In this document: in pieces, positions 12,623 to 37,900 of the stretch
How positions within the stretch are numbered: the first letter of the stretch is position 1
Layout of the letters: the number at the start of each line of letters is the position of its first letter
DNA from: Gracilinanus agilis
Lineage: Eukaryota
Assembly (NCBI RefSeq): GCF_016433145.1
Contig: NC_058131.1
Coordinates: 160,041,522 to 160,105,406, forward strand
Length of the DNA: 63,885 nucleotides
Direction of reading: 5' to 3'
Translations under genes and position numbers: made by a program
The notes under the pieces: model-generated
Told to the model about the DNA's origin: nothing
The model's input: the letters and a program-made list of their open reading frames with translations, nothing else
The model's database searches: none

Positions 12623-15600
12623 TTACTTGAAGGTCATCCTTGCATTCTTGGCTCTGGCCTGTTGGGGAAAAGGGGCTTTGTGTTCCCTAGCTCGGAGCAT
12701 GGGGCCCCACCTTAACGTAAACCCTGCCATCTTCTCCTTTAGTTCTTACCTTTGATTCCGGACTCTTCAGGGTTGGGGCACTAAGAAGAGAGAAAGGGGT
12801 CTCACACTGGGGCCTCTCGGCACCAGGCTAAAGTAGAAGCGCTGCTCCCAGAGCAGGAAAGTGGAACTTTGGACAGTTTTGGGGAAGGAAGGAGAAGCAC
12901 CGATTTGGAGGAATGGAGGAAGCAAGCGAGATGACTCCCTTCTAGACCCTCTAACCTCTCTTGGTTGCCTCAGACTCACCTATGAGCTTCCGACAGCTTC
13001 TTTTTCTGCATTTAAAGAAAATAACAATAGCCAGGATGGACTAAGTGGCTCCTTAGCAAGGACTTCCCTAAAACAATGTACTAGATACGTCTTCCCTTCC
13101 ATTTGTGGGTGTCTGTTGGCAGCACCCTATTCTCAAGGGTCCCAATGGGCACTGGATCATGGAATTTAGGGCCAGAAGAGACTTTAGATGACACCTAGTT
13201 CAACTCTTTCTTTTTACACACAAAGAAACAGAGGTTAAGCCTCAGGTCACACAACTAGTCAAGGTCAAAAGTAAGACTGGGATTTGCATCTTTCTGACTC
13301 CCTGTCCAACAACTCCAAGCACTAGGTGATGAGGATTGAAAGGAATTTAAAGTGTGATGAGCTCTTTGAGTTCTAGTCTAACTCCTTGATTCTTTTTTTT
13401 TTTTAAACCCATACCTTCCATCTTAGATTCAATGCTATGTATTGTTTCTAAGGCAGAAGAACAGTAAGAACTAGACAATGAGGGTTAAGGGACTTGCCCA
13501 GGGTCACACAGCTGGGAAGTGTCTGAGGCCAGATTTGATGCCAGGACCTCCCTTCTCTAGGCCTGGCTTTCTATCTACTGAGCTATCTAGCTTCCCCCTA
13601 AACTTCTTTATTCTGTACAGATCTTACTTTTTTCTTTTTACAGATGTTCAGTGACACACAGGTAGTAAACAGAAGAGCCAATATTTGGACTTTGATTCTC
13701 TGGCTCCAAATCTAGAGCTCTTTCCACATGTCTTGGTCAGGGGGACCATTGATCCCATAAGCTGTACCTTTCATCAATACTGTATATTGGTTCCAAGGCT
13801 AAAGAGTAGTGAGGGCTAGGCACTGGGGGTCAAGGGACTTGTCTAACTTGACAGCTAGGAAGTGTGAGGTCAGATTTGAACCCATGGCCTCCCGTTACCC
13901 TGAATCTTCTAATCCTCATGTCCCAGACACCATCCAGGAACTCCACTCTCACCTTTGCGACACTAGCCTGGCTGTTGGAAGCTAGTCGCTTGGTTGATTT
14001 AGGTGGAGAAGCCTCCAGGGATATCTCATCAGAATCTTCATCAGCATCATCTTCTTCCTCACTGGCCTCTTCTTCCTCTTCACTGGCCTCTTCATCCTCA
14101 TCCCTCTCTCCTTCCTCCCAGGGCAGGTCTAAAGTCACTGTGGAAGTGATGAACAAGATTGAGCCTGCATTAAATCAAAACAACTGAGGTAACACCTCAC
14201 ACCTAGCAGATTAATTAACGTGACAGCAAAGGAAATAATAAATGTTGGAGGGGATCTGGCAAGATTGGGACACTAATGCATTGTTGGTGTTGTGAATTGA
14301 TCCAAATTCATTGCCATTCTGGATGGTAAGTTGGAACTATGCCCAAAGGTCATTAAAAAACTGTCTTACCTTTGATCCAGCCATACCACTGTTGGGTTTA
14401 TACCCCAAAGAGATCAAAGGGGAAAAGACTCGTACAAAAATATTTATAGTCACATTCTTTGTGGTGGCAAAAAAATTGGAAAATGAGGGGATGCCCTTTG
14501 ATTGGGGAATGGCTAAACAAATTGTGGTGTCTGTTGGTGATGGAACACTATTGTGCTCAAAGGAATAATAAACTGGAGGAATTCCATGTGAACTGGAAAG
14601 ACCTCCAGGAATTGATGCAGAGTGAAAGGAGCAGAGCCAGAAGAACATCGTACACAGAGACTGATACACTGTGGCACAATCGAATGTAATGGACTTCTGT
14701 ACTAGCAGCAGTGCAATGATCCAGGACAATTCTGAGAGACTTATGAGAAAGAAAACTACCCACATCCAGAGGAAGAACTGTGGGAGTAGAAACACAGAAG
14801 AAAAACAACTGCTTGATCACATGGTTGATGAGGAATTTGGGATGTAGACTCTAGGTGATCACCCTAGTGCAAATATTAATAATATGGAAATAGGTCTTGA
14901 TCAATGATACATGTAAAACCCAGTGGAATTGCGCATTGGCTACGGGAGGGTGTGGGTAGAGGGGAGGAAAAGAACATGAATCTTGTAACCAAGTAAAAAT
15001 ATTCTAAATTAATTAATTAAATAAAATGTTCCAAATTCAAAAAAAAATGAACTTGCATTCTCCAAAGCCTTTTTTTGTCCTCAGTGTTAAAAATAGATTA
15101 ATTAGCCTGACAAGACTTGAGTAAACTGATGCACAGTCAAGAAAATAGCACATGCAATGACCATCAAAACATAAATGGGAGATCAATGCCATAAAACAAT
15201 TGAAAATGAATATCACAAAACTACAAAGAACAGTGTTGGGCTAAAAGAAGGGATATGAATAGATACCTCTCTTTATGCCTTTGCTGCTATGTATGCATGT
15301 GTGGTGATGGGATGTCTACGGGGATGGAATACTGCATATATTGTGAGATTTTTTTTTTGGATGAATTGATTGATTTTGTCCATTCTCTCCTTCCCCCTCC
15401 CCATCTTCCTTTTCTAGTTTTCTCTAAAGATTTCTATGTTATGGGAGTAGCTGGGTGGCTCAGAGGTTGGAGAGTCAGGCCTAGAGATGGTGGTCCTAGG
15501 TTCAAATCTGGTCTCAGACACTTCCTAGTTGTGGGATCCTGGGCAAGTCACTTAACCCCCATTGCCTAGCCCTTACTGTTCTGCCTTGGAAGCAATACTT

Positions 15601-17865
15601 GTACTAAGATAGAAGATAAGGGTTTAAAAAGAAAAGAAAAGGCAGATTGGAGCCAGTTTGGGGAAAACTTTGAATTTCAGGCCAAAGTTTCTTGGACAAG
15701 GAGAAAAACTAAAGAATTTTGAGCAGGGAAGTAGAAGACTTGTTTGGGGAATATTAGTCCCCTATTACCTATTATGATGTTATGTGTCCTTCATTTTTTT
15801 TTGTTTTTGTTTTCTAACAACCCTTACCTTTTGTCTTAGAATCAATATGAAGTGTTGATTTTAAGGCAGAAGGGTGGCAAAGGGCTAGACAAATAGGCTT
15901 CAGTGACTTGTTCACAGGGTCACACAGGTAGAAAGCTTCTGAGGCCACATTTGAACCCAGGACCTCCTGTCTCTAGGCCTGGCTCTCAATCCCTGAGCCA
16001 TCATTGCCCCTCTCCTTTGTTTTTTTGGAAAGGACCAAGGACATCACGATGCTGGGGTTGGAGTAGAGGGTGTTTGTGATGGCTGATCCAAGAGTCCAGA
16101 AGGCTGAGCACAAACATTTGGGGTGGCTATTCCTCTAGATTTGTGCATCCCCCATTTCCTTTGTGCTCTTGTGATTCTCCTTTGCTTGTGGAATACGATG
16201 CCTTCTTCGACATGGGCATGCCATGCGGGATGGCACTGTGCCAGCGGGCTCTCCCGTGTCTCACTAGAGTTCTTCAGAGACCTGGAGAATGTGCCTGCTA
16301 CGAACCTGGCACTGCAGACTTACCAGTAAGATCACGGCCGCTGATGTGGACTGGCCCTGAGCCTGACCGAAGATGCAAAGTGATGGGGGGAGTGAGCTCC
16401 ATTCCTGAAATGTTGGCCTGAAAAAGGAAGCAACCAGGAAGCAGAATTTCTCAGGTTTCTCGCCCCTACCGTCTACTCTGAAGATCCTGGTTTTGCTGAG
16501 AAACAGCTTTGGAGAAAAGCAGGTGAAGTGTATCAGTCTTCAGTTACAGAATATCCCAGGGCAGCTAGATGGCCCGGTGGATAGAGAGCCAGGCCTGGAG
16601 ATGGAAGGTCCCAAGTTCAAATTTGACCTTAGACACTTCCTAGCTGTGTGACCCTGGGCAAGTCACTTAATCCCCATTGCCTTACTGTTCTTCTGCCTTT
16701 AAAATGATATGTGCATTGATTCTAAGATGGAAGGTAAGAGTTAAAAAAAAAAGAAAGGTATAAGGTATCTCAAAAGTCTCAGTGCAGTTGTTTAGCTTTA
16801 ATAAACTTATTCTATTATTTAAGCTTAAACTATCACTGCCCGGGGACAACCCTATATTCCTGCTGAAACGGATGTCAGGAGTCATCTTAATTCTGGTTCT
16901 TTCTTCTGCCCCTCTTCAGTCTCTCTACTTCCTTTGGTACTTAATATTTCTCTTATTTCCTGTGCTAATATTTATTCAGATAAGTTACTCCTCCCAGAAG
17001 CCTTGCATTTTAAAAAAGATGGGCAATTTTTGACTTAAAGGAATGAATCTCTAAGGGTAGAATTTCAGAGAAAGCAATTTGCTTCACTCCCTATTCATCT
17101 CCCACCCTTTGTTGATGGACCAGAGGGTAGCTTACCATGGGTAGGACTGAGGGCTTCAGCATGGCAATGGGAACTGGTGGTGTCTTCTTGCCATTCTCAT
17201 CAGGGGGTGGTATGACCTCCACTATATTTAGCTCATCTTTGGCCTTCTCCCCTAGGCATACCTGCAAGGGGTATGGGAGCCCACTGAAGCTTCCTCCTAG
17301 CAACTCCCCCATGCCATGGGCATCTGCCGGTACACATTCCCATCATAGTCAGGATTCTCCCTCTCCCCAACCTCCTTCCGTCTCACTTTCTATCACACTT
17401 GATGGTCTGCTTTGAAGTTCACCCACCGTATTCAGAATTAATTTATGATCACCATCTTCCAAAGGATCAAAGGTATAAGAGCGGTTCTCTTGGCTCAACT
17501 CACAGCCTAGAGAGAAGGAGAGGCAAGAGAAGAATGGGGAAGGTGACTACAACAAATATTTTTCTCTGCCACCCCCCTCCCCAGTCCTCTTCTCTACCAT
17601 TTTGGGTTGGCAAACACACAGGTGGAGCTCTGAATATCAATCAACACAAAATTCTGGCTAGAGAAGGCTTTCTAGTCCCAGTGTTGGGAATATAATAGAA
17701 ATGGAGGAAACCCAAAGAAGTAGGGAAGAAGAGTTTTCCTTATCACTAAGGCTGGGAATAAACCACCCAACCTCCCAACTCCTGCAGTAGAAGAATCCTA
17801 CCCCACTTACCCCAGAACAGGGCCAAGGACTTTTCAGTCTTGCTGCTTTCACTCGTTGGAGGCAT
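12623..17865 (-). CDS. NPM2: Nucleoplasmin-2 (oocyte histone chaperone), 210 aa. CDS exons 17865-17811, 17506-17427, 17261-17136, 16417-16324, 14137-13953, 13005-12980, 12780-12750, 12658-12623
   Basis: Nucleoplasmin core ([15 protein letters not shown]...[16 protein letters not shown]...[12 protein letters not shown]...[21 protein letters not shown]), acidic tract, and bipartite NLS KR-x10-KKKK. All introns are GT-AG, the total is 633 nt in frame, and the gene lies between XPO7 and FGF17 as in human. The three short terminal exons are less certain than the core. Confidence 0.93.
13391..13598 (-). mobile_element. SINE1_Mdo-like SINE (a second partial copy lies at ~13771-13895)
   Basis: Poly-T then aaaccc..ccttccatcttag...gacttgcccagggtcacacagctgggaagtgtctgaggcc. 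Confidence 0.85.
14171..15047 (+). mobile_element. 5'-truncated LINE-1 (ORF2 C-terminal end, 3' UTR, A tail), antisense in NPM2 intron 4
   Basis: ORF2-like peptide [18 protein letters not shown]...[12 protein letters not shown], frameshifted, ending in aataaa and an A-rich tail. Confidence 0.9.
15444..15640 (+). mobile_element. SINE1_Mdo-like SINE
   Basis: Typical head, CORE-derived middle and A-rich tail. Confidence 0.85.
15794..16010 (-). mobile_element. SINE1_Mdo-like SINE
   Basis: Reverse complement of the same family, inverted relative to its neighbours. Confidence 0.85.
16559..16752 (+). mobile_element. SINE1_Mdo-like SINE
   Basis: gggcagctagatgg...gttcaaat...gtgaccctgggcaagtcactt...gatggaaggtaagagttaaaaaaa. 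Confidence 0.9.
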
Positions 17866-21122: not shown

Positions 21123-21429
21123 AGTTGGGAGCTTTGAAAACTAAAACTGTTATTTTATCCTTTTGAGTATGAAAAAAAGACTATGTGCCACTGTACTAAA
21201 TTTGGGATACAAAAATAGCGCAAAAGGAATTGGCATCGTAACTGAGGAAAACAAACGGGCCAGAGAATGGTAGGCAGAAGAGACATTTCGGACTAAACCA
21301 ATACAGGGATAATACGGAATATGGGAGAAGGAGGTTGACACCTCCGACCCAGGGACAATGGCAGCTTAGATCCAATCATGGTTCCTGGTTCCAGAACTAA
21401 AATGTGTACGGAGGAGGCTGCACTGCAGG

Positions 21430-22320
21430 CAGGGAGTCGTTAGGCGGTTGTAGACGTGGCAGGAGAGAGGAATACAGTGAGAAGGGTAGCCTTCCTGGGC
21501 CGGGGGCAATTTGCAAACAGCGGAGTTGACGACGGAAGTACTTCCAGGGTACTAAAATAACGATTTCCCTGGCCAATAAGCGGGTGGGACAACTATCTCT
21601 CCTTAGCCTTATTTCGGAAGTGCCCCGAGATCTTATCCTTCACTAAAGGCGTCGCTACTGCCCCCTCTCGCCGAAGCCCAAGCGCCGGCAGACAGTCTCG
21701 CTAGTGCGATTGCGCCAAATACAAACAGGGGCGGGGGGGAGGGAGAGGAAGAGGAAGGAGAAAAAGGATGAAAGAAGGTTGCTAGCTCTCTTCCCCAATT
21801 TTCTTCATTTCACTTTTTCTTTCGCGTCAGAGCGACTAGAGCGTGCGCAGGCGCATTGGCAGCCCAGCCAGCTTTCCCAACTCTTTTCGCTTTTCCTCTT
21901 CGGAGAGGTTCTACTTCCGGTCGCTGCCCGGAACCGGTGATTGCGGGGGTGAGGGGTCAGGAGGAGGGGCATATTTGCTAGGCGGCGATGGCGGCTGGGA
22001 ATGGGGGCAGCTGCCTGGATTCGCTGGTGAGTGTGGTTTCTCTGCGTGGGTCCTGGTGTCAGCTGAATGGGATGGGGCCGTGATCTGTGCTTTTCTCCCG
22101 TAGGGTCCCGGAGAGCTTTTGTCGGCGGCTCACGCGCTTTCCCTGCCAGCCGAGGCCTATGGCAACGATGTAAGTACGAGCTGGGCCCGTGGCGTCTCAC
22201 GCCCGGACGCCCAAGCACCCCTCTGCTCTTGAGGTTTTCCGTGCCCAGTCCCTGCGCCCCTCTAAAGACTGCTCACTTGTTTTGAATCAAGCGGATACTA
22301 CGTGCTCCGCACTCTGCGTT
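21430..22320. promoter_or_regulatory. CpG island and TATA-less promoter of PBDC1
   Basis: CpG-dense in an otherwise CpG-poor window. NRF1-like TGCGCAGGCGCA 21844-21855; ETS/GABP cores at 21533-21539, 21615-21621, 21913-21920 and 21928-21933; CCAAT 21573-21577; GC box near 21728. Confidence 0.85.
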
Positions 22321-25300
22321 TAGGTTTTTTTTTTTTTTTTTTTTTTTAACCCCTTACCTTCCGTCTTAGAATCAATATTATGTATTGGTTCCAAGGCAGA
22401 AGAGTGCTAAGGGCCTAGGCAGTGGGGGTTAAGTGACTCGTTCAAGGTCATACAGCTAGGAAGCGGCTGAGTCCAGATTTGAACCTCCCATCTCAAGGCC
22501 TGGCTCTCAATCCACTGAACCACCTAGCCTGCCCCTACTTTTAGTTATGTGGAGCCCTTTGTTAGAAGCGCCTTCGTCTTCTTCAGTAAGACAGATTCGG
22601 ATGAGAAATCCTTGGCTGGCTTGGCTAACTGGCTCTTATGCCCTGTATCCTATTCTCTCTCATCCTCTTTGGCAGGTTGCTCCTACAATGAACTACCCGC
22701 CCGTATTTTTAATTTCTTTTTCCTTACTGGTTAATCTGCTACCTGCAGACATGCCAGTTTCCCTCAATCCTTCAACCAAGAGGTTCACGGGTGGGTTTTT
22801 GAAAAATATACATTTTGATGACCATTTAATTTTTTTTTCCTTTGTAATCCTATATATTTCATTTTGTGTATTTAAAACATTCTGAAAAAGAGGCTCTTGG
22901 CTGCACCACATGGTCAAGGCCGCCTGTGACCTTATTATAAAGAAACAGGGGATGTAGGTTGAAACTCCACTGTCACACACTATATGTGTGACTGAGGCAA
23001 GTCATGACCTTTCTAGACTATTACTTCCAGGTTCTCTAAAATTGAGTGATGGTTTCTGAGGTTTTCAAATCTGGGTCTATGATCCTGTGACTTCTGAACA
23101 TTTAACATTGGATATTCCATAGGTTTCTCAAATTTCAGCATGTCCAAAATAGAACTTTTTTATTCCCCTTCTTCTGGATTACCTTGTTAGGGAGTACCAC
23201 TATCTTCTGAGTCCTTGCTCTCATCTATGCTTTCTCTCCAGTCAGTTGCCTAATCTTACATTTCTATTTTCAATGCCTCCTCCTGTCTGCTCCCTTCTCA
23301 TCACTCAAGTAGCCCCACACTGGTAAGGTCTTCTTTACCTCTGGCCTAGACTTCTAGCCTTCCAAATGGTCTCTTTACTTCAAAGCCTTTCCTTACGCAA
23401 ATTCATCTTCCAAAGAACTGCCAAAGCAGATCTGACCACTGTCACTCACTTTTGGGGCTGAATATAAACTTTTAGACATTAACAGTTTTCCCCAACAAAA
23501 TGACCCCACCCTATCTTTCCAGGATTATTATAAACCTTTGTAGCTGTCTTACATTTCTGCAAATCATTCCTTTCTCATTTCCACCTCTTAGAATTCCTGC
23601 CCTATCATCCTTCAAGGTTTAGCTTAAGTATTTACTACGATTCCTTTCCTAATCTTTCTGACTGCTAAGTTTCCTTGCTCACTCTTATCAAATTTTCTTT
23701 TGCCATATAATCTTCTAAAGGGTAGGCTCTCTTTCCCTTTTCTCTTTTTATAACCAGCATCCAGTAGTGCCCAGCTTGTAGTAGGTAAGCCATCCAACCT
23801 CCTAAGACTCCCAGGCAATTCTTCAGACTAAATTTCTTAAATGGTACTGACCTGCATTGATGTCTTATGCCATCTAATATAGGGGAGCCAAAGTTAAGGA
23901 GTTATATCCTGGCTCCATGTGAGACGACATTGACCTTGATAGGAAAGAATTGTTAAGTGGAGAATAGGATAATGCTTGCTAGATCTTGGCCTCATTTGGC
24001 ATGGCTCTTAAGAACTGGACATCAAGATAAGACACTGGAGGATAAGAATACTTTAATAATGATTATTTATGATACATTGTTTTTGTAGCATACTTTTAGA
24101 TCATTGTTACATCTTGCCTTGACTTAGCATTAGTCTTATAATTGGTCTCTGGCTTTATGCTCCTGCTTCTAATCAACCCTGTATGTTATTTGCCAGTTAA
24201 TCTTTTAGTTGTAAACCTTCAGTTTACTTATTGCCTATTGAATAAAGTCCAAATTCCTTAGCCTGGCATTCAAGGCTTTCCATAGACTGACTCCAACATA
24301 CCTGTATAGGCTTAACTTTTATGTTTCCTTCTTGAATCCTGCCAGACACCATTCCCTGAATTTTTTTTTCCACTTGTGCATTTGTGACTTTTACTCTTAA
24401 GAATGCTTCTACCTTAAGTTTCATCCATGAAATCATTATCTATCCTTGGAGGCCTAACTTGAGTTTTCCTTCTACTAAGCTTTTCTTCATCTCTTTTTCA
24501 TAGTAATATGTACCCAATGAATAACACTTAAAATACCTTGTATACAGTAGGTATTATAGAACTTATAAATACAAATAACTTTTTAAAAGGAGAACATCTT
24601 AGTTTTTATTGTGTGTTACCATTTTATAGTTGAAGGACTGAAAGCACACAAGCAAATCAGTCTTAAGAGTTTAGGAATAGGCAAATAACCAATCAGACTC
24701 TAGTCAATACTCTTAGTATGTATGCTCATTCTTAAAAGCTGGTTGTCCATGGCTATCCCCAACAGCATCTCCCCCAGCTGTTATAGCAATTTAATTGGTG
24801 AGACTCGTAGTCCTAGCCTAGTTAACCTAGAGGTGTCATAGCTTGGGGTTGTCATTCTAAAGGGTGTGTGTCGTAGATAACATTCTAGTCAGTTACTTTT
24901 GAATTCTTGTGAGTTTTTTTGCCAGAATGGCAGCGTTTCATTTTCCTCCCTCCTGGCTTTCCCAGTGCTCCCTTCAGCTCAGACCACTTGTTCTTTTGTG
25001 CTAAGCCAGCAGCAATGTTGAGAGATGACTTGTCTTTCTTTGTTACAGCCCAATATTGAGATGGTTTGGGCCATGAAGGCTATGCAGCATGCTGAGGTTT
25101 ATTACAATGTGAGTCTTTATTTCAACTATTCAGATAGAATTGAAGAGACCTTTCATGGTGTCAAACATTTTATTGTACCCTAGCTTCTGGGAGGTTGGGG
25201 TGGCATTCGTCCTAGAGCTTAAAAGAGCAGAAAAAAATTAAGGAGAACTTGGTTGGCACAGGGAAAGAACTGTCATTTTATTTCTCTCATTCTTTCTCAG

Positions 25301-26851
25301 TTTAGATGACTAACAAAAAAGCTTTTTAATTCCTAGGAGACAGTGGTACAGAAGAAAGAGTGCTAGATTGGGGGAGAAAATACAAGTTCAAGTCCAAGTC
25401 CAACTTACAACTTGTGGGATCTTGGGAAAATCAGTTTCCTCTTCTACTAAACAAAGGGCTTGGACTAAATGATCTGATGTCCCTTCTCCACTCCAGATCT
25501 AGGATTATGCAGTGGAAATAAAGAATAGACCATGCTTAAGGGGACTAGAATGTTCTTTATAATAATGCTATCTATAATCATGCCTATGAACTAGACATGT
25601 TTATTTCCTTCCCTATTTTCTGGCAGTTGATTTCTTCAGTTGACCCCTTGTTCTTAAGACTCACTAAAGTGGATGACCAGATCTATTCAGAGTTCCGGGA
25701 GAACTTTGGGAAACTCAAGATAGATGTGTTGGACCCTGAAGAGCTCAAATCAGAACCAGCTAAAGAAGTAAGGAGGATCTTAATAGGCATTGAATTAAAA
25801 TTGTGGTGTGTGGACTTAAATAACTGCAAATATTACCTATTTTTAGTGACAATGAACACTTTGAAAAAGACAAAATTCCTGAGGGCCCAGTGTCCAGTAC
25901 TTTTTCCTTAACTGGGTCTCTGTATCTTGATCAACCTGAAAGTGCAGTGGTTATTCATGGGTTTAGCCCCACGTTGATATGGAAACTTTGCCCTGCTATC
26001 CTGGGCTATTTGTCCCTCTTTAGGCAATCTCTTCTCTGGAACTCCCCCTATTGGTGCTTTAGTGCAGATATTTGATCTTTTCAACTCCCAGAAGCATTCT
26101 TTCAGAATTCCCCAGAATTAAGTATTCCCTCTGAATACTACCATGCCCATAACTTTAGGGCTAGGAACATCAATTGATAAAAACAACAACAACCTTTGTA
26201 ACCTGTTTCCTTTGCCATATGGATAGAACAGCTTCAGACCTCTTAGGTATTATTAAAACCCTGTCCTGTCAGTGAATAGTAATTTCAATCCTGGTGTATG
26301 GCATTAAGCTTGTTCCTCTACTAGAGATTGGATTTGTGTAGGGCCACAGTAGATAGGTATGTTGATTTTTCTAGTGTGGGCTTTGTTTCTTCAGAAGTGG
26401 AGACCTTTTTGCATGAAGTTCAATGGTATTGTGGAAGATTACAACTATGGTACATTGCTGCGACTGGACTGTACTCAAGGGTATAGTGAAGAAAACACTA
26501 TCTTTGGTGAGTATGACACATAATTTTTTTTTCCTGTGGATTTCTCTTATTTGAAAAACTACTGTTTATATATGAAGTATTTGATTATCAGGATTTTTAC
26601 TAGGACCTAAAACCTAAAACTCCTTTATCCCTTAAGGCCTTTGCCATTTTGTGGGTGGAAGAGAGGAAGTTTTCTTGTCCTCTATCAGAAGAAAGGGAAA
26701 TCTGACACTTAACTCTCTTTGCTTTCCAGCTACTAGGATACAGTTTTTTGCTATTGAAATAGCTCGGAACCGGGAAGGTTATAATAGAGCTGTTTACAAT
26801 AGTGCTCAGCAGAATGGAGCAGCAGAAAAAGACAGTCTCACGTCCAGGTAA
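21988..26851 (+). CDS. PBDC1: Polysaccharide biosynthesis domain-containing protein 1 (CXorf26 ortholog), 179 aa. CDS exons 21988-22026, 22104-22169, 25049-25108, 25627-25767, 26395-26506, 26730-26851
   Basis: Translation ...AHALSLPAEAYGND/PNIEMVWAMKAMQHAEVYYN/LISSVDPLFLRLTKVDDQIYSEFRENF...DVLDPEELKSEPAKE/KWRPFCMKFNGIVEDYNYGTLLRLDC.../ATRIQFFAIEIARNREGYN matches the PBDC1 family. GT-AG introns, 540 nt in frame, preceded by a CpG-island promoter. Confidence 0.95.
22326..22535 (-). mobile_element. SINE1_Mdo-like SINE, antisense in PBDC1 intron 2
   Basis: Long T run followed by aaccccttaccttccgtcttagaatcaat...ctctcaatccactgaaccacctag. Confidence 0.9.
22990..23790 (+). mobile_element. Decayed L2 LINE 3' fragment (with a MIR piece at its 5' side)
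   Basis: tccaaaatagaact...ctgccaaagcagatctgacc...gtagtgcccagc..gtagtaggt pattern typical of the L2 3' end. Confidence 0.55.
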
Positions 26852-27014
26852 AGAATGTAGGAGCTACTGGCATTTCAGATCACTGAATCTAATGTCCAAG
26901 AGTACTTGCAGGAACCTTTGTGGATTAAAAAGGGATCATCATTTGGCATCTGCTCCATGTGGTTTCCTGATTCGGACCATCAGAGGTGTCGATCAAACTT
27001 TTCAAGGAACAATC

Positions 27015-27020
27015 AATAAA
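27015..27020 (+). terminator. PBDC1 proximal polyadenylation signal AATAAA
   Basis: First AATAAA after the PBDC1 stop codon (about 165 nt downstream), followed by TGTG/TTGTG elements. Confidence 0.65.
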
Positions 27021-27389
27021 AAATGTGATCTTGTGACAAGTATGGATACTTAAGAAAGTATACAAAAATATAAGACATTTGTTGGGTGTTTATGACCTTT
27101 GTATGGGAATTTTTTTATAAAAAGGACTTTATATTTTGCCCTTCCTGGATCTTTCTCAATGTTCTCAGAAGAGTTCCTGAAATGTACAGGTTCATGAATT
27201 GCTCTTAACTCTAGGGCAATTATCTTAACAGCTGTCAACTTTGCTATCATCTCTTGTACATTTGTGGATTAACATAATTTTTATACTTCCTGTACCATTT
27301 AGAAATAGGTTTGGATACAATGGTATGCCAACTGTTGGCATTATACTATTCATATGCCATGGCTAGAACACTTAAAACAACTGGTTGAG

Positions 27390-27395: not shown

Positions 27396-28975
27396 TTCAG
27401 TAGAAACCATTGAAGTTTATTGGCGGTCACAATGCTTACACTGTATGCAGCAAACACCCTTACAAGTCAACCGTCAATCTGATCACGCAAGAAAGGACCC
27501 AACACACAATCGCCAGAGGAAAGAACAAAAAAATAAAATAAAAAAAAAAAAAACAAAAACACAAAACCAAAAACAAAAACAAAACAACAAAACAAAACAA
27601 ACAGGGTTGGGGATGGGGGGTGGGGGTGGGTGAGGGAAAAGAAATGAAAATTAAACCTAATTGATGTATCCCGTGGGCAAGAGCTGAACTAGAGATGCAC
27701 ACAACTAGCAGCAACAATTGTGGGAAAGGTTCAAGGCAAACAGCTTTCTATTTCTCCATAGGTAATTTCTTTTGTTTTTATTCTTAAAAACAGTAACTTG
27801 GGTGGCTTTTTTTTTTTTTAAACAAAAAAAAATTTTTTTTAAAAAGGGGCGGAAGGAGAAGGATGTTAAATATTTCATGCTAGGCAGACCTTGTTATTAA
27901 GAACCCCCTCCATTGTGGTAACTTTCTCCAGCTCATACATTCATGAGTGCAGGGTATATATAGATATATATAAATATCCACACACATACATACATACACA
28001 CAACACACTCGCTCTCTCTGCCTCAAGGGCTGGGGAAGACTAAAAGAGTTATTGGCCACAGGAACTTGGCTGGAAGTCGCCATGTTCAGAGCTGTTCTGC
28101 CCCAGGGTAATTAGCTTTTAATGCCAGCTCCTGTGTCTCCATGTTAAGAGACCCAAGAAATCATTTAACATACAGTTAAAATCACACTGCCTTAGAGCAA
28201 GAGGCCTCTGTCCAGGGAAATGGGAGGGAACAAGATCAAACACTTTAGCTGGAGTATCTGTCAGTGGCCAGGGGGACTCAAGGACATAGTGAAGGAGGGA
28301 TGGTGCTTGGTTGGACATGGCTTAGAGTTCCTAATAACAAGGGTTAAGACAGTAACAGGAAGTGGTAGTTTCAGGGAGAAGTGAAGGGACGGACAATAAG
28401 AAAAAATATACATTTGGAATTACTTTTTTTTTGCCTCTCTCTACACTTGTCACTAAATATATCTCTGCACTTTCACACACCCTCATCCAGTAAAGCTTCA
28501 GGCCACCAGAATACACATTTTCGTCACTCGCATACACAACCCCTCACTTCAGCATTGGTGCACTAGACTCTGTAAAAATTTTTCAATCACACTTTTTTTT
28601 AAACTTGAGTCAATATAAACCTTGTTCAAAATGTTATGAAAAAATGTACATGTTTATACAAGGCAGGTTGTGTCAGGACGCTGGGGTTCTTCCCCTCCAC
28701 CAGGAAGAGGGGGCTGGATGCTCACACCTTCCTGCTTACTATCCCCACTTCCCCCAACCCCACCCCACCTCCCAGGAACCAGCAGTGCCCTGCCCCCCTG
28801 GTGAGCACAGGCTCACACCCCTTCTTCCCTGGGAAAACAGCCAAACTGACCTTTGTAATTCCCCCCCAAGAGGGAGGAGCAAGGGTCAGCCATACCCTCT
28901 CCCCCTCAGAATTGTTCAACCCTCTGGGCCAGACCAAAGGGACACTGCTCTGTACAGGTGGAATCTGGTACAGTG
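27395..28975 (-). other. XPO7: XPO7 3' UTR (~1.6 kb; distal end approximate)
   Basis: Runs from the stop codon at 28976 to the minus-strand AATAAA at 27421-27416, with no recognisable transposon fragments. Confidence 0.8.
27416..27421 (-). terminator. XPO7 polyadenylation signal AATAAA
   Basis: Plus strand TTTATT at the end of the XPO7 3' UTR, with a U-rich element downstream on the minus strand. Confidence 0.8.
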
Positions 28976-31900
28976 TCAGCTCATCATATCATTGCTATTC
29001 ACGCCATAGGTGGAATTTTTCATGGAGTCATTGACTTCCCGACGAAATGCTGACAAGTTCTGGGTGAACCTGCAGAGAAAGGTCACATGGGTTATAGGTG
29101 GAAGGGGTATCTTATGAAATTTTTTTCCTTTTTCAGCAAAAAGTGCTGCCTTTCCAAACAAGATGAAGGACATTGACCATATGAAGTTTCCCCTGATTGA
29201 AGGCTCTGTAGCAAGTTTAACTAGGATTCTAGTTAAGTCTCAGGGCAATAATAAAGAAGAAAATTTATAAGCGAAGCTGGGTAAAATTCATAAAGGCCAT
29301 TTTTAGTTAGAACTCAAAATCTTGGGAATCTCCCAACATTCTCATTTTACTAAATAAACAAGCTTAATAAAAAAAACCCAAGGTCACACAGAGCTTAATT
29401 AGAGAACTAAGAAAAGCTCATAGGCTTTAGCTTCCAGAGATATTTCCACAGCAACACATGGGCTTCCATCAGATAAGCAGGGTACTTATCCAGCATTCAT
29501 GATAAAGAAAAGGGGTTAGCTGAGATGTGAGGCTGGATAAAGTAATGCTATCTATATATCAGTACCAAAAAATCTCATTTTCCCAAAGACAATAACATTT
29601 TGAGTAGTGAATGGCTCTTATATGGGAAGTAAATCAATCCTATACTGGTAATGCCATTTTAAAAAATACCATCACCATGTACTTACCTATCTCTGTTTTT
29701 TGTCAGAAGATTTCGCTCAATGCCTTCCATCAGATTCTCAAAACACAGGTGCATTGCCTGCTGTTTTTCAGGGGGCTGGCTGTTCACTATACTGTTCCTC
29801 AAGTCTGAGAAATACTGTTAAAGTGGAAAAGATTCGCATTCATTATCCAGCCACTGGGAAAAAAAAGTATTTGCTAGGCAAAAATAAAAACAAAGTCTTT
29901 GTTCTCTTGGAATTCAGTCTAAAGCTATGAAACACACTAAAACATGGGTAAGGGCATGAGAGGAAATGCCATTCAAGTTCTAAGTGTAGTCCAAAACATG
30001 AAGAGCATATGTTCTAGGCACTGCGCTAAGCACTGGGGATAGAAAGAAAGGAAAAGACAGGCCCTACCAGAGGAGCTCACAATCTAATGGGGAGGTAAAC
30101 ATACAAACTATATACAGGATAAATTTGAAATAGGTAATAACAAATCCAACTCTTTTTTCCCTGAGATACCTGTGACCATCAATTTAGAAAAAAGTTCCCC
30201 CCTTCCCCAAGTCTGATAGGAACCTCGGCATTCACATGCTTTTAACAGTAACAGAAAGAAAACTTTCAATTCTGAAAGACTAGTTCCCCAGGCTGTCTTT
30301 GCTAGGACCCAATGTGCAATGAGCAAATTCTAGAAAATTAGGCCATTGGTTAGATCAGGTACTCATCTTGGGGCCTACAAAAGAGACTTCAGGCAGTCTC
30401 TGAATTTGGAGGAGGGGAAAAAACATCTTAATTTCAACATATCTGGATTCCTTTCTAATTTTATGAATTTAAGAACACTTGGAGAAGAGAACCATAAGCT
30501 TCACAAAGACTGCTAGAAGGGACCCTATCACAGAAAAGGCTTTAATAAGCATCTTTAGTTTTAGGATTGGATCATGCCCTTATCATACAATTCGTAGAAT
30601 TAAAAGAGATGGAAACAGAGGAGGAGGTAGTCATTGTAGGTACAAGGAACAATAGAAGGACGGCAGAACTAAAGTGCCGTGTGTGCTTGTACACACACAG
30701 TAGAATTTGTTGGAGTCCAGACTTTATTTGGTAGGTAATGAGCCAATTGAATGCTTTTAAACACAAAAAAACACAGATCTGTGAAAAAAATCAATCTGGC
30801 AGTGCTGTGGAGGCAGCAACTGGGCTGGAGTAATCCAGGAAGGGTCTTTGTCTTTTCTTTCTCTGTCTCTCTTTGCATTTCATGTAGTTTCTGTGGGGTA
30901 ATTTCTCTAAAATCATGGTGCCTGACGTTCTTACCTTTTCATTAAGTAATATCAAACCAAGTAGAGGTCTGGACATGGACCACTGGTTCCGACAATCCTC
31001 AAAAATGATAATATTCAGCACCGTTGACAGCATCTGGAAGTAACAAGAACCAAGAATCTAAAGAGGTTTCCTTAGCTTGATAAGTAGCTTGTGAGGTTCA
31101 GCTATTCAGAACCTATTCAGTACCCTGTCTATAAACTCTGTGACCACAGAATGTGATGTTGGCAAATGGAACTTTTTTGTTTTTCTGTGGATTTATTTTT
31201 GGTAGGTGGGGGTTGGTGGTGACACCAAAAAGCCTCACTTCTAATATAATTTCATCTTTATAACATTTCTGGAGGCACAAATTATCTCTATATTAATGGA
31301 ATTTTTAGCTCAATTGATTAGAATATCATGATCATAAGGTCAAGGTTTTGTATTTGATCTATGCGGTCCAAATATATTCACACTGTCTAACTGACTGGCC
31401 ATTCTGTAAAATATGTATGCAGATCAAAGAACAGATTAAATTGTGGATTGATCAAATATGAAGTAAATTTAAGAAATAAAGATATATTAATAGAAGTGTA
31501 TAAATATAGGATAAATAATTTGTTTCTACTATTCTTTAAATTTTAAGACCCCAAAATAATGAATGGGGCTCAACTCTGCAAAAGGACAAGATAAACAAGG
31601 GCATGGGTGGTAGAATTTGTATACCAGAACTGTGATTCTAAGATTAAGTCCCAGACTTATATATAACAACTATTTTGTTAAAATGATACCGACTTAACCT
31701 TCACAATTAGGGCCATTAGATGTCAAGCATTTTGTATGGACATTCCCAGAAGTAGCTCTTATGCTGGAATTCAATTCTCTGGGCTTACCTTCAAAAGTTG
31801 CTTACCTGTTGGATCATTTCTGGATGCTGCTGCATAATGTGCAGGAAACGGTCACTTTCCTGGGACAGGGGTGTTGTCCTCTTCTTGGTGCTACGTGATA

Positions 31901-34900
31901 GCTGCTTGAAGAGGTATGTCACAATGTGGTCCAGACAGGAGCAGCAGCCTGTGCATACCATGGTGTCTAGGAAAAGAAATGAGAGGAATGGAGCTGAGGT
32001 GCTATTGACTCAAATCCATGGGCAGAGAGATTCCTTGTGCTTAACAACTGACAGCAGAAGTGATTTACAACTCCAATGTAGTCAAGTAACCAACCCTAAA
32101 TATATCTATCAGATTTATACTATACTAAGTATATACTAAGTTCTATACTAAGTACTTTGTGGAAATGAGAAAGTATTACAAAATAGAATTAATACAGTGA
32201 ATTCCTATACAAATTTATCTAATAATAAATTCTGCCACATGTTTACTTTTGGTTTTCCTCTGGAGAATTCTGAACACTAAAGGATTTAGATAACATAAAA
32301 TCACCTTTAACAGAAAATTTTCAGATTATTATTATTATTATTTTTTTAAACCCTTGTACTTCGGTGTATTGTCTCATAGGTGGAAGATTGGTAAGGGTGG
32401 GCAATGGGGGTCAAGTGACTTGCCCAGGGTCACACAGCTGGGAAGTGGCTGAGGCCATTTGAACCTAGGATCTCCCGTCTCTAGGCCTGACTCTCACTCC
32501 ACTGAGCTACCCAGCTGCCCCCTTAGAAGAATGGTGAGAACTAGGCACTGGGGATTAAGTGACTTGCCCAGGGGCACACAGCCAGAAAGTGTCTGAGGCA
32601 AGATCTGAACCTAGGATCTCCCAACTCCAGGACTGGCTCTCTATCCACTGAGCCATTTAGCTACCCCCAGATTATTTTATCCATTTTATTTTGTATTACC
32701 CATACCTTCTGTCTTAGAACCAATACTAAGTATCAATCCCAAGGCAGAAGAGCAGAAGCCCAGGCAATTGGGATTAAGGGACTTGCTCAATCACATAGCT
32801 AGCAAGTATCTAAGGCCACATTTGAATTTGGGATCGACTATCTCTCCAGGCCTGGCACTCTATCCAACGAGACACTTAGCTGCCTATTTTGTTCATTTTA
32901 AAGAAGGGGAAAATATAGTACAACTCAATTAGTAAGTTAAGGAGTCACTGGTCAAGAATCAGTACCCTTTTTTCTATGATGCTCTTAGTTTCCAAAAATA
33001 TACTAAAATTGGTTGTGGGCCAAGTAAATATTTAACTACCTTCTTTGGATAGTTTAAAAATTAAACTGAACCAGACATCATGTGCAACAAGATAAATGAA
33101 AATAAGGGTGCAGACAGAGAGGACACCAAATATTATATATTCAAAAAAATCATTCCTGTATCTTGGAATGAAAATCTGCCATATAAGCACATTAAATGTT
33201 AGAGGAATTGATTTCCATTCCCATTTGTGTTTTGTTCAATGAGAAGATTCAAGGTAAAAAAGCCGAAGGTCCACTAAATGATAGCCTAAGCCAGTATTAC
33301 AAAGGGTGAAAGCTCAAGTTTTGTTGGATTCAAAATACTGTTACTGTACTAGAGTTTTCTGCTTTGAGGTGTGTGTACATAAATCCATATATAGCAACAG
33401 GATTACTCTTTCAAACACTTGATTCTTCTTTGTTCAGTCACCATGAAACTTTGTACTTTACAAGTTTAAGTGTTTTCTACTCTCCAAGAGGGGTTACTAA
33501 ATGCTCCATTATACTATCATCATACAAGTTGGGGTTGGAATGAAGAACATGTGCACTCTTATTGAGAGACCCCCAGGTACATACCTAGTGCAGTGAGTCC
33601 TTCAGAAATGGAAGAAAGAATATACATGATAACATGGGGTTCCAGGCTGGCAATAAAGTTCATATGGTCCTGGGTGAGGACTTCCAGTAACGAATAATAG
33701 GACTGACTGAGCTTAGGGTAATCCTGTAGGCAAATAGAAAAGTAAAAGTCAACTGAGGACAATGAATAACTTCAATAAGGTAGCAGAATACAAAATCACC
33801 AACCTTTCTATAGTAATAAAATTAAGGAAAAAGAGCCAGAATAGAAAAAATTCAATTTAAAATAAATTCTAAATGCACAAAATACCTGAAAGTTAATATA
33901 CAGAAACGAAGGCATGACTAACAATAGCTAATTTAAAACGATATTACAAAGCAGCAATAATATAGAAAACTTATTTGTTTTTTTTTAATTATAATTATTT
34001 TTTTTAAATTAGTGCAAGAAAGTAGAAAGGCTGAGAAGCAAAGTTGCTCATTTTTAAAAAAATAAGTAAGATAAACCCAAGAAGAAGATGAAGTACTGGG
34101 TAAAAGAGTCCCTATTTGACAAGAACTACTGGGAGAATGGGGTAAGTGGTTTGGCAGGAAAAAATAGGTATAGTTCAAGCATATAAAAACACATACCATA
34201 ATGCACCAATTAAAACATATTTATTAAGAACTCTAAATGGTTTATGACATTAAAAAAAATTAGGAGACTGGAACTGCAGAGTTAGGGGAAGAAATCATAA
34301 CCAAATGCTGAAGAGAAGTAGTCACAAATGACAGAAAAGGCATTTAAAAAAAATTATACAGGAAGTTGACAAATAGAAAAACATTTCTGCATTAAACATC
34401 TCCAATAAAGCCTGACAATCTAAGATATATAGGGAAATGACATGGCTATATTAAGAGTGACTCTAAAAAATAAGTATGTAAAAGTTATTAACAGATTTCA
34501 AAATAAGAAATGCAAATTATTAACAGCTATATATAAAAAAAAGTAGGTAGGTGACTCAGTGGATAGTGTCAGATATGGAGTCAGGAATCTTTTCAAGTTC
34601 ATATCTTGTCTCAGACAATAGCTCAGTGACTGTGGACAAATCACTTAATACTGTTGACCTCTGTTTCCTCATCTATAAAATGAACTGGTGAAGGAAATAG
34701 CTAGTATCTATGCCAACAAAACTCCAAATGGGGTCAAGATGAGACAGACATGACTCAGAAATGGCTGAACAGCAATATGAAAAAAACCCCTCCAAATCAC
34801 TATTAGAGAATTGTTAAGTAAAAAAAAAAAAAAAAAAAAAAAATTCAAACAAGTTTCACCTCACATTCATTTAAAATTGCAAAGGCAACAAAAGACAGAA

Positions 34901-37900
34901 ATTGCTACCATTGGAGGGCACTGGAAAGATGGGTACACTAAAATAGTATTGGTAAAGCTATTAATTCCAACTTCTGAAAATCATTTCGAGTTATATTAGA
35001 AAAGTTATGAAAAACTGTCCATATTCTTTGATCCAAGGATTCACTGGGCATATTCCCCCTCATGCACCAAAATATTTATAGCGGCATTCTTTGTAGTGGA
35101 AAAAAAATTAGAAACAAAACGGGTTCCCACTAGCTCGGGAATGGCTGGACAGATTGTGGTATATGAATGGACTGAAACAAATGATAAACATGAGAACTAA
35201 GAGAAATATGATCGTAGACTTAGTATGAACTGATGATATGACATAAGGGTCTGGGGTGAGGAAAATTTACGATACTTAACTGTGGTGCCATTAACTTATG
35301 AAATTAAAGGAAAAAAAGAAAAGAAAAAAGAATGAATCCTAGTCTAGGTGAATAAAGTTGAAAGGAAGTGAAGGTCTAGAAACCTAGCACTATAACCTCA
35401 ATCTTACCAGGAGGTCACTATGTGGGATAGAGAGGAGCAGCTTGATGAAGGTCTGTAGGGCGTTGTCCAATGCATCATCTCCATAAAGTCGGAAGACCCC
35501 AAAGTTGACATAGCTTCCACTGAGTGCAGCCTTTAACATGGAAAAGCAGATGGAGATGCCCTTGAGCTTCAGTGCGTAGACCTGATCCTTTGGGACTTCT
35601 CCTAGTGTCAGGATGCGATTTCCTGAGGACACACATACATACACCAGTTTAGTCCCTAGCTTAGCCACTCCAAAGAAAGTCAAGGAAACTAAGAGAAAGG
35701 CTTTAACAAAGCCTGATTATCCAGCATGCAAATTGGGTGAATTGAATGAATAATAAAGGTAAAATGAAAGCTATATTACTGAGTTAACAAGCAAGGCGTC
35801 TTTTCCTTATCTGACAGCACAGTGCGTTTTTCTATTCTTGGTCTAACCACTCAGTATACATTGAAAGGAAATCAGTTTCTAAGAAGCCAGAGAGACATTA
35901 AACTTACTACTGTGAATGAAGGAGGGTTCTTGTTCCATTACACCTCTCCATTCCTACTAGTCCCCTAATCACCAGGAGCCAAGTATTACTTTTCCCAAAA
36001 AGCTGTCAAGTCATTCTGTACCTTTTTTCTCTTAATTCAGAATACATGGCAATTCTTATATGTCCCTATTTGTTGTCTCTGCCCCAAGGCATTATGTAAA
36101 GAAGTTCTCTAAGGCCAGTCCTATTGTCTGTGACATCTAGTATGTCTCAGAGGTAGCAGGCACTTCAGAAATATTTGATAAAGTGAACTAGATAAATCCC
36201 TGGGAAGAGGAGGGGCTCTACAACTTATAATTTCTGCCTGCCACTTTGTGGTTAAAGTATAATCCTGCTCAGGAGGCAAAGCTGCCTCACAGTACCTACC
36301 ATATGTAGTAATCATTTTGCTGGTTTCCCGGAAGAGTAAAATACCATTTGGGGAGGAGACATCAAATTGAAGTCGTTGGGACCTAAAGCAGAGAATATGG
36401 GAAACAATAGTCAAGTGTGGTGCTGGAGAAATCTATGGGACTTAAGAAGTCCAGCTACTCCTTAACCCCACACCCCAGCCCTACCCCAAATCTCTATTCT
36501 ACTCTGTCTTGAATGCCCAGAAAAGGGGTATTATTTGGCTTCTAGATTACTGTTCTTATTGGTCAGAGCATATGCATTGGGCTATTGAACTTGGGCTAAG
36601 GGCCACCACCCAAGTTTAATAAGCTCAATGATGTGGAATTAGCTATGCTACTTATATGTTGAAGGATGTGATGTTAGATGTTCTGCTTCTCATTCAAATT
36701 TAAAAATCTAAGAGACAGAACAAAGGAGAGAAAAAAGATCTCGTTAGCCTCTGATAGTCACTGAATAGTTTCTTTAAAGACATTTCTTTCATTGAGGTAG
36801 TAGAGGTTTCTCAGAGACTATTCTTAATAAAACAAGAGTAGAATTTGCTCAAGGGCAAAAAGGAAATCAGAGCCTGAGCCAAACCAAAGTGAAAATTCTT
36901 TGAGTCTCTTCCTTTGCTCACTATACACACATTCCTTTTTTCTACTCTATTCCATGGTGGAATTATCTTCTGATTCTCAAGTGACAAAAAGGCCATATCA
37001 TCCCCTATGTTTATGGATTGCCTATTATCTCATAAATGAGTAAATCTTTTTACTTTGTTTGGCCAAACCTCTATTCCTGAACTGAGGTTTCTGATCTTCT
37101 TTAAATAAAAGCCTGTCCTGAGTCTGCAAATTGGTTTAACTAGTGGAGATTTTATGCATTTGATGATAACTTTACTAGGATCCATGTTATGTATGAGTAT
37201 GTATGTTTTTCTTTTATGTAGGGGACAGATGAGGTAGGTGAAGGGATAGGATATAAGTTAGCTTTTTAGGAAATGAATTCCAACGTACACATGCCAAGTC
37301 TGCGTAGGGGGCATCAGAAGATACAAATTTCCTTGAGACTTCCTCTATGATTCTCAATTCAAGCTTACCTGTTATGTACCAATTCAGCCATCAGTTTGAG
37401 CACAGGTGTAGTACAGGCTGGGTCATGGTACCAAAGTTCAATTGCCCTCTGAAGGATTGGCATGTAAGATGGGTACCTGTAAGCAATAAGCTAAGGAAAC
37501 ACCCTCTGGGCTCTATTTCAAAAAGCCCCAGGTATAAAATAATTTCTGAGCACCTGACCAAGAAAATTCTAATAACAAAAATCTCCAGGTTCACTCTTCT
37601 CTGGCTTGGTGATAATAAACTAATATAGCAAAATGTGTATGAGTGGTAGGAGGGGTGGGGAATGGAGGGCACAGCCCACAGGGCAGGCCTTAATCTACCG
37701 GAATAAGGAGTTGCCTTAATTTAAAAGATATATATAATATTAATTTTATAGTTTCTCTCCAAGAAAGCTCAAAATTTTTACATTCTCATATCACTTCAAC
37801 AAGAGGCCAAGAGTCAGTTACTTTCTTGATTTCAAGTCAAGATACCTTAGTTTCATCAAATAAATTATTGTTATTTAATAATTTATTATTTCTTAAGGTC

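What the first reader, a model, noticed from the sequence alone, without database searches (positions are those of the whole stretch)
21988..26851. Intact multi-exon PBDC1 between NPM2 and XPO7, although the eutherian gene is X-linked
Seen: a complete 6-exon PBDC1 ORF with a CpG-island promoter, head-to-head with NPM2 and tail-to-tail with XPO7. Established: human PBDC1 (CXorf26) is at Xq13.3, and human XPO7-NPM2-FGF17 are neighbours on 8p21.3 with no coding gene between XPO7 and NPM2. From recall, the exon 2-5 lengths here (66, 60, 141, 112 nt) match human. Inference: this is the ancestral autosomal position, and the gene moved onto the eutherian X by a DNA-mediated, intron-retaining relocation. 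That is the opposite direction to the usual out-of-X retroposition.
Basis: partly seen in the sequence, partly recalled or inferred. Interest (0 to 1): 0.8.

Follow-up and report, generated by a model that had tools for sequence, protein, structure and literature searches.

The report
PBDC1 at its ancestral autosomal site
This opossum window holds an intact six-exon PBDC1 gene between NPM2 and XPO7, the place it has in sharks, fish, frogs, reptiles, birds and monotremes, so placental mammals are the ones that copied it as DNA onto their X chromosome.

Summary
Six GT-AG exons (21988-26851, +) encode a 179-aa protein that matches Pfam PBDC1 end to end and is identical to the annotated PBDC1 of Gracilinanus agilis. 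The 5' end is CpG-rich. NPM2 lies divergently upstream and XPO7 convergently downstream.

NPM2(-)/PBDC1(+)/XPO7(-) is also the order in gar, Xenopus, alligator, swan and echidna. PBDC1/XPO7 are adjacent in koala, brushtail possum and basking shark.

In eutherians, PBDC1 sits on X-sized contigs and is unlinked from NPM2-FGF17. It keeps all five introns at the same positions (internal exons 66/60/141/112 nt). It also keeps an NRF1-like promoter motif.

In hippo, about 275 nt of the XPO7 3'UTR still lie 1.1 kb downstream of PBDC1. This relic indicates a DNA-level, duplicative copy. The anteater and hippo loci are collinear, so one event in the eutherian stem is likely.

The gene tree shows single-copy orthology. 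The only extra copies found are recent retrocopies.

DNA-level gene gain on the early eutherian X is a documented pattern, so this is a clean new example, not a new kind of event. No paper describing it was found. The scan had noted only this same stretch before.

The parts
21250..22500 (.). CpG-rich region over the PBDC1 5' end
   Evidence: GC is 0.54-0.59 and CpG observed/expected is 0.71-0.88 in 500-nt windows.
21845..21854 (+). NRF1-like palindrome 143 nt upstream of the ATG, followed by an ETS-like CTTCCG at 21914-21919
   Evidence: A motif with at most 1 mismatch lies at -111 to -169 in opossum, koala, echidna, alligator, Xenopus, anteater and hippo. Dinucleotide shuffles give 0.2-3% per sequence.
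21988..22026 (+). PBDC1 exon 1 (ATG, 39 nt)
22104..22169 (+). PBDC1 exon 2 (66 nt)
   Evidence: The length is the same in 8 other vertebrates.
25049..25108 (+). PBDC1 exon 3 (60 nt)
25627..25767 (+). PBDC1 exon 4 (141 nt)
   Evidence: Pfam PBDC1 E 5.5e-13
26395..26506 (+). PBDC1 exon 5 (112 nt, ends in phase 1)
   Evidence: Pfam PBDC1 E 6.1e-15
26730..26851 (+). PBDC1 exon 6 with stop codon
26852..27415 (+). Probable PBDC1 3'UTR, with AATAAA at 27015 and 27390
   Evidence: Four small runs from the window's organism hold 100% of the sampled words of 26730-27420.
27396..28975 (-). XPO7 3'UTR, with its poly(A) signal at 27416-27421 on the minus strand
   Evidence: Conservation starts at 27396. 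The block 27396-27538 is 96.5% identical to echidna, 93.8% to swan, 90% to alligator and 77% to gar.
27642..27928 (.). Part of the XPO7 3'UTR whose homologue survives 1.1 kb downstream of hippo X-type PBDC1
   Evidence: The 84-nt core is 86% identical, E 5e-22, with one hit per locus. Alignment A1 is collinear. A 28-nt core is unique in the window at 27676-27703, with 0 of 100 shuffles matching.
28976..40939 (-). XPO7 stop codon and 3'-terminal coding exons; the gene continues beyond this range
   Evidence: The public annotation at the matching offset gives an IBN_N/TPR_XPO7 product.
13833..17865 (-). NPM2 coding region: ATG at 17865, core exons 17130-17264 and 16316-16426, acidic tract around 13833-14174
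283..2197 (-). Three exons of an FGF8/17/18-type gene, FGF17 by position
   Evidence: Pfam FGF E 2.9e-16. Best solved relatives are FGF8 and FGF18. No FGF17 structure matched, so the paralogue could not be told apart.

Best explanation
The window carries the functional, single-copy marsupial orthologue of PBDC1. PBDC1 is the animal counterpart of yeast Chp1/Ypl225w, a ribosome-associated chaperone for nascent eEF1A. The gene sits in the position it has held since early jawed vertebrates: divergent from NPM2 and convergent with XPO7. In the eutherian stem, a DNA segment of at least about 5-6 kb was copied to the X chromosome. The segment ran from the promoter, through all six exons and five introns, to at least 1.1 kb past the stop codon, reaching into the antisense XPO7 3'UTR. 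The parental copy between XPO7 and NPM2 was then lost. Shown: the ancestral order, intron retention, the collinear eutherian loci, and the XPO7 3'UTR relic in hippo. Inferred: that the event was duplicative, its timing, the loss of the parental copy, and X-linkage outside mouse and human.
For: The gene is intact and is PBDC1.

The same order NPM2(-)/PBDC1(+)/XPO7(-), with 1.7-4.3 kb spacers, occurs in swan, alligator, Xenopus, gar and Gracilinanus. Echidna has FGF, uncalled NPM2 exons, PBDC1 and XPO7. Koala, possum and basking shark have PBDC1/XPO7 adjacent.

Marsupial PBDC1 lies on 400-930 Mb contigs.

In eutherians, porcupine has NPM2-FGF without PBDC1 in the 10 kb upstream. PBDC1 and NPM2 are on different contigs in porcupine and pocket mouse. 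Mouse Pbdc1 and human CXorf26 are X-linked according to papers.

Exons 2-5 measure 66/60/141/112 nt in every species modelled, including anteater and hippo. The NRF1-like motif keeps its position in both eutherians. The XPO7 3'UTR relic lies beside hippo PBDC1. Anteater and hippo loci are collinear across the introns and 2.4 kb upstream.

In the tree, mammals have support 100/98, marsupials 99/95 and eutherians 100/99.
Against: The relic was seen in one eutherian only; anteater lacks it within 10 kb. Upstream flanks share a motif but no alignable sequence. No decayed PBDC1 exons were found near porcupine NPM2, but only about 10 kb of that interval was visible and the XPO7 end was not reached. 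X-linkage of the anteater and hippo contigs rests on contig size and record order. Transcript evidence is indirect, because the read-laying run failed. Whether eutherian XPO7 still keeps the duplicated 3'UTR part was not checked here.
Confidence: 0.85

Rival explanations
1. The duplication onto the X happened earlier, in the therian stem. Marsupials then lost the X copy and eutherians lost the autosomal copy, which would make the two genes old paralogues, not orthologues.
For: The tree cannot date the copy relative to the therian split. Echidna groups with eutherians only weakly, at 90/37.
Against: This needs one extra loss. No second marsupial PBDC1 was seen among the listed best relatives, apart from a retrocopy. 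All 12 or so marsupials sampled have a single cluster on giant contigs.
Confidence: 0.07
2. The X copy arose by retroposition of an unspliced, read-through PBDC1 pre-mRNA. Such a transcript would carry the introns and the downstream antisense XPO7 sequence.
For: PBDC1 does spawn retrocopies, in anteater (L008) and in possum. The relic lies downstream on the PBDC1 sense strand, where read-through could reach it.
Against: All five introns are retained. An NRF1-like element 111-169 nt upstream of the ATG is retained in position. The known retrocopies are fully spliced.
Confidence: 0.03
3. A larger block of proto-8p21 moved to the X, and everything except PBDC1 later decayed or moved back.
For: None found here. 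It is raised only because the flanks are old and mostly unalignable.
Against: No NPM2 or XPO7 coding fragments occur within 10 kb either side of anteater or hippo PBDC1, while the koala control finds all six XPO7 exons tested. NPM2-FGF adjacency is intact in porcupine. The strongly conserved XPO7 3'UTR block 28297-28689 is absent beside hippo PBDC1.
Confidence: 0.03
4. The X position is ancestral, and marsupials moved PBDC1 off the X to lie beside XPO7.
For: None.
Against: PBDC1/XPO7 adjacency occurs in shark, gar, frog, alligator, swan and echidna.
Confidence: 0.005

Closest known systems
Burst of DNA-level gene gain on the X after the eutherian-marsupial split (Zhang et al. 2010, PMC2950125)
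   Same: Same period, same target chromosome and same DNA-level mode. That paper attributes 73-95% of the gained genes to DNA-level duplication.
   Different: Here the parental copy is gone, so the outcome is relocation of a single-copy housekeeping gene, not a new paralogue. PBDC1/CXorf26 was not found in the supplement text held for that paper.
Retrogene traffic onto and off the mammalian X (from my own knowledge of Emerson 2004 and Potrzebowski 2008; not read here)
   Same: A gene changes linkage between an autosome and the X.
   Different: The X copy keeps five introns, a promoter motif and flanking DNA, so it is not a retrogene. True PBDC1 retrocopies exist elsewhere, in anteater (L008) and in possum.
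Positional gene relocation as described for Drosophila (for example PMC2817413, listed, not read)
   Same: A single-copy orthologue sits in a different genomic neighbourhood, with the old site vacated.
   Different: This is a mammalian case with a very old microsynteny broken on one branch only, and with a surviving scrap of the donor flank.
Yeast Chp1/Ypl225w, chaperone of nascent eEF1A (PMC10869706; bioRxiv 10.1101/2024.02.22.581594)
   Same: Both papers call human PBDC1 the orthologue. The window protein has the same Pfam domain over 125 of 126 positions.
   Different: No functional test exists for the marsupial protein. Function here is inferred from family membership only.

Membership tests
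PBDC1 family (Pfam PF04669) | Full-length match to the family profile above the curated cut-off | tested here: met
   P0357, identical to the window product, scores 195 bits against a cut-off of 28.5, covering profile positions 1-125 of 126. Single exons match in order.
Vertebrate PBDC1 orthologue | Falls inside the mammalian clade of a single-copy gene tree | tested here: met
   Groups with Monodelphis at 100/97. Support is 99/95 for marsupials and 100/98 for mammals.
Vertebrate PBDC1 orthologue | Shared exon-intron structure | tested here: met
   Exons 2-5 measure 66/60/141/112 nt in the window, koala, echidna, swan, alligator, Xenopus, gar, anteater and hippo.
Vertebrate PBDC1 orthologue | Expression as a spliced mRNA in this species | tested here: inconclusive
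   Small runs from the same organism hold 100% of the exon 6 plus 3'UTR words but only about 24% of the whole-gene words.
DNA-level relocated gene (eutherian PBDC1 relative to this locus) | Outgroups agree on one location and the derived lineage has another | tested here: met
DNA-level relocated gene (eutherian PBDC1 relative to this locus) | Introns and non-transcribed or flanking donor DNA carried along | tested here: met
   Five introns are retained. The XPO7 3'UTR relic is present in hippo. The promoter motif is retained. The relic was seen in one species only.
DNA-level relocated gene (eutherian PBDC1 relative to this locus) | Parental copy absent from the old site in the derived lineage | tested here: inconclusive
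   The 10 kb upstream of porcupine NPM2 holds no PBDC1 remnant (best E 0.29), but the XPO7 end of the interval was not reached.
Retrogene | Intronless copy of a spliced mRNA | tested here: not met
   The window gene and the anteater and hippo X-type genes each have five introns. Anteater L008 (654 nt) and the possum 540-nt copy do meet this feature.

The most novel reading that the evidence does not exclude
The copy onto the X was not a random landing. It formed part of the stem-eutherian rebuilding of the Xq13 region around the X-inactivation centre. It was kept because X-linkage changed the dosage of an eEF1A chaperone: Pbdc1 escapes X inactivation in mouse, which gives female-biased expression. 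The proximity of PBDC1 to the inactivation centre is from my memory and was not tested.
Probability: 0.08. Interest if true: 0.65.

Novelty: new member of a known kind. Interest (0 to 1): 0.45.

Why it matters
This is a tidy, datable example of how the placental X gained an old housekeeping gene. A three-gene arrangement held since early jawed vertebrates was broken once. The moved gene kept its introns and a scrap of its old neighbour's 3'UTR, so both the donor site and the mode of transfer can be read directly.

It offers a natural comparison. The same single-copy gene is autosomal in marsupials and monotremes and X-linked in placentals, where it is an escapee from X inactivation in mouse and is silenced in human hybrids. 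That comparison is useful for studies of dosage compensation.

It also warns annotators that 'X-linked in human' does not predict 'X-linked in marsupials', even inside the conserved part of the X.

Tried and rejected
- **Literature:** nothing on PBDC1 synteny or relocation. The Zhang 2010 supplements held as text do not mention CXorf26, 2610029G23Rik or ENSG00000102390, an Ensembl id given from memory.
- **Decayed PBDC1 exons upstream of porcupine NPM2:** noise only. XPO7 pieces are absent there too, so the interval was only partly seen.
- **NPM2 or XPO7 coding fragments beside anteater and hippo PBDC1:** none.
- **Nucleotide homology of eutherian upstream flanks to ancestral loci, with sensitive settings:** none.
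- **The most conserved XPO7 3'UTR block (27396-27538) beside hippo PBDC1:** only a doubtful 56% match, E 0.085.
- **The relic in anteater:** not found.
- **Solved structures for an XPO7 exon:** no match. XPO7 C-terminal exons have no Pfam domain, so XPO7 identity rests on exon identity to annotated loci.
- **Rfam on 26800-29100:** only sub-threshold hits.
- **Faster eutherian evolution:** the long eutherian stem in the tree (0.37 against 0.12) shrinks to a 4-6 point identity difference within the core domain. I do not claim strong acceleration.
Full report
**1. What is in the sequence.**
Between 21988 and 26851 on the plus strand there are six exons of 39, 66, 60, 141, 112 and 122 nt. Every internal border is AG...GT. 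They join into a 540-nt reading frame of 179 codons plus stop.

Exons 3 to 6 hit Pfam PBDC1 (PF04669) one after another, at profile positions 1-18, 19-65, 66-102 and 104-125 of 126. The product is identical, residue for residue, to the annotated PBDC1 of the agile gracile opossum, Gracilinanus agilis, and differs at one residue from Monodelphis. That protein scores 195 bits on the Pfam model.

The public gene spans 4864 bp, exactly as here, on a 725-Mb contig. So the window is almost certainly from a very large autosome of this species.

The 5' end is CpG-rich: GC is 54-59% and CpG observed/expected is 0.71-0.88 over 21250-22500.

**2. The neighbours.**
- *Upstream, minus strand.* Nucleoplasmin-core exons lie at 17130-17264 and 16316-16426. 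They hit Pfam Nucleoplasmin at E 9e-11 and 2e-10, and their best solved relative is human NPM2. An ATG sits at 17865-17863, at the offset of the public NPM2 call.
- *Further upstream.* There are three exons of an FGF8/17/18-type gene at 283-2197.
- *Downstream, minus strand.* A gene ends at stop 28976-28978. Its exons are 94-100% identical to those of the swan and koala genes whose products carry the IBN_N and TPR_XPO7 domains.

The two start codons are 4.1 kb apart, so a shared bidirectional promoter is not shown.

**3. Where other vertebrates keep the gene.**
I found full-length PBDC1 proteins through an exon-4 search and two word-index searches. I then looked up their contigs.
- Swan has FGF(-), nucleoplasmin-2(-), PBDC1(+), XPO7(-).
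- Alligator, Xenopus tropicalis and spotted gar have Nucleoplasmin(-), PBDC1(+), XPO7(-).
- Echidna has FGF(-), PBDC1(+), XPO7(-). Uncalled NPM2 exons lie in between, at L002 2799-4320.
- Koala and brushtail possum have PBDC1(+), XPO7(-).
- Basking shark has a beta-TrCP-like gene, then PBDC1(+), XPO7(-).

The gap between the PBDC1 and XPO7 stop codons is 1.9-4.3 kb throughout. The tail-to-tail pair therefore dates to early jawed vertebrates, and the three-gene order at least to bony vertebrates.

**4. The marsupial side.**
All named marsupial PBDC1 proteins fall in one 90% cluster. It includes koala, wombat, possum, glider, tammar, bilby, devil, antechinus, dunnart, monito del monte, Monodelphis and Gracilinanus. 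The chromosome-scale contigs measure 400-930 Mb; wombat and sugar glider are on 49-64 Mb scaffolds.

A hidden marsupial orthologue of the eutherian gene should have ranked among the best 120 hits, next to the eutherians at about 80% identity. None did. The only second copy is a 540-nt intronless retrocopy inside a Tim17-family gene in the possum. This removes the second refuting scenario.

**5. The eutherian side.**
Papers treat mouse 2610029G23Rik/Pbdc1 as an X-linked gene that escapes inactivation. They treat human CXorf26 as its X-linked counterpart, silent on the inactive X in 9 of 9 hybrids.

Eutherian PBDC1 proteins mostly sit on 120-190 Mb contigs. In porcupine and pocket mouse, PBDC1 and NPM2 are on different contigs. 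The porcupine NPM2 locus shows NPM2(+) then FGF(+), with no called gene in the 10 kb upstream.

The anteater and hippo loci align with each other through all introns (72% over 4.4 kb) and in two collinear upstream blocks. Xenarthra and Boreoeutheria therefore share one locus. That points to one event before the eutherian radiation.

**6. How the gene moved.**
Three observations point the same way.
- *Introns.* Exact gene models give internal exons of 66/60/141/112 nt and the same intron phases in koala, echidna, swan, alligator, Xenopus, gar, anteater and hippo. Only exon 1 and exon 6 vary.
- *Promoter motif.* An NRF1-like palindrome lies 111-169 nt upstream of the ATG in opossum, koala, echidna, alligator, Xenopus, anteater and hippo, followed by an ETS-like TTCCGG. 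Dinucleotide shuffles give the palindrome in that zone in 0.2-3% of trials. Such motifs are common in housekeeping promoters, so this counts as supportive only.
- *Flanking relic.* This is the strongest point. About 1.1 kb downstream of the hippo PBDC1 stop lies a stretch of about 275 nt in the same orientation. It is collinear with the distal XPO7 3'UTR that follows PBDC1 in opossum, koala, echidna, alligator and swan. Its 84-nt core is 86% identical to the opossum, E 5e-22. Each ancestral locus gives one hit, always at the orthologous place. A 28-nt core occurs once in the window (27676-27703, no shuffle matches) and once each in koala and hippo among the ten loci.

The distance from the PBDC1 stop is 825 nt in opossum, 866 nt in koala and 1123 nt in hippo. 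The copied segment therefore carried PBDC1 plus flanking DNA that belongs to the neighbour's transcript on the other strand.

If eutherian XPO7 still has its own 3'UTR, which I did not check, the event was a duplication followed by loss of the old PBDC1 copy.

The next, strongly conserved XPO7 3'UTR block (28297-28689) is not seen beside hippo PBDC1. The downstream breakpoint therefore probably lay inside the XPO7 3'UTR, short of its coding exons. No NPM2 or XPO7 coding fragments lie within 10 kb of the anteater or hippo gene.

**7. Orthology.**
A maximum-likelihood tree of 40 proteins, rooted on sharks, recovers mammals (100/98), marsupials (99/95) and eutherians (100/99), each as a single group. 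The window protein groups next to Monodelphis.

The eutherian stem is long (0.37 against 0.12 for marsupials). Within the core domain, however, eutherians are only 4-6 points less identical to turtle or kiwi than marsupials are. Much of the difference comes from the ends, including a eutherian C-terminal extension: exon 6 is 245 nt in anteater against 92-128 nt elsewhere.

**8. What the gene does.**
Two 2024 studies identify yeast Chp1/Ypl225w as a chaperone that acts on nascent eEF1A at the ribosome, recruited through the nascent-chain-associated complex. Both name human PBDC1 as the orthologue. A CpG-rich promoter with NRF1 and ETS motifs fits such a housekeeping role. For this opossum, that role is inferred from family membership.

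Expression is suggested, not proven. Four small runs from the window's organism hold every sampled word of exon 6 plus 3'UTR up to 27420. Three small runs of the same study, two of them among those four, hold only about a quarter of the words of the whole gene, as transcript contigs would.

**9. What is known and what is new.**
Zhang and colleagues reported a burst of gene gain on the X after the eutherian-marsupial split, mostly by DNA-level duplication. So the kind of event is established, and the direction is not odd.

I found no paper that describes the PBDC1 case, although synteny browsers would show it. The new items here are the depth of the broken microsynteny, the intron-by-intron check, and the donor-flank relic in hippo.

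**10. Limits.**
- The relic rests on one eutherian species.
- The old site in eutherians was only partly examined.
- Splice junctions were not confirmed with reads.
- The two N runs in the window (42972-43127 and 45218-45345) were left untouched.

Noticed in passing
L008:10001-10654 (anteater); brushtail possum second place: Intronless PBDC1 retrocopies encode proteins identical to the parent gene. One is on another anteater chromosome. One lies inside a Tim17-family gene of the possum. Both look recent.
   Followed up: partly
window 27396-28975: The XPO7 3'UTR is extremely conserved, and the conservation starts right at its poly(A) signal (27416-27421, minus strand). The block 27396-27538 is 96.5% identical to echidna, 93.8% to swan, 90% to alligator and 77% to gar. 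The PBDC1 signal AATAAA at 27390 lies 26 nt away on the other strand, so the two mRNAs may abut or overlap.
   Followed up: partly
L002:2799-4320 (echidna, minus strand): Three nucleoplasmin-core exons lie between the called FGF gene and PBDC1, but no NPM2 gene is called there.
   Followed up: partly
L001:1-10000 (koala): No NPM2 exons were detected in the 10 kb upstream of koala PBDC1, although opossum has them 4-6 kb upstream. The gene may lie further away or be missing.
   Followed up: no
basking shark place (no DNA held): The gene upstream of shark PBDC1 is a beta-TrCP-like F-box/WD40 gene, not NPM2. From memory, beta-TrCP paralogues sit near the FGF8/18-NPM3/1 paralogous regions in human.
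   Followed up: no
L007:13541-13785; L010 exon 6: Eutherian PBDC1 has a longer last exon (245 nt in anteater, against 92-128 nt elsewhere). It gives a C-terminal extension of about 40 residues. Eutherian proteins are mostly about 190-270 aa, against 163-190 aa in most other vertebrates.
   Followed up: partly
window 22330-22540: By eye, intron 2 starts with a long T run followed by a MIR-like or tRNA-derived SINE-like sequence. This was not checked against a repeat library.
   Followed up: no
L010:20980-21450: An intronless ribosomal protein L23a-type reading frame (156 aa, minus strand) lies 7 kb downstream of hippo PBDC1. It is probably a processed copy.
   Followed up: no
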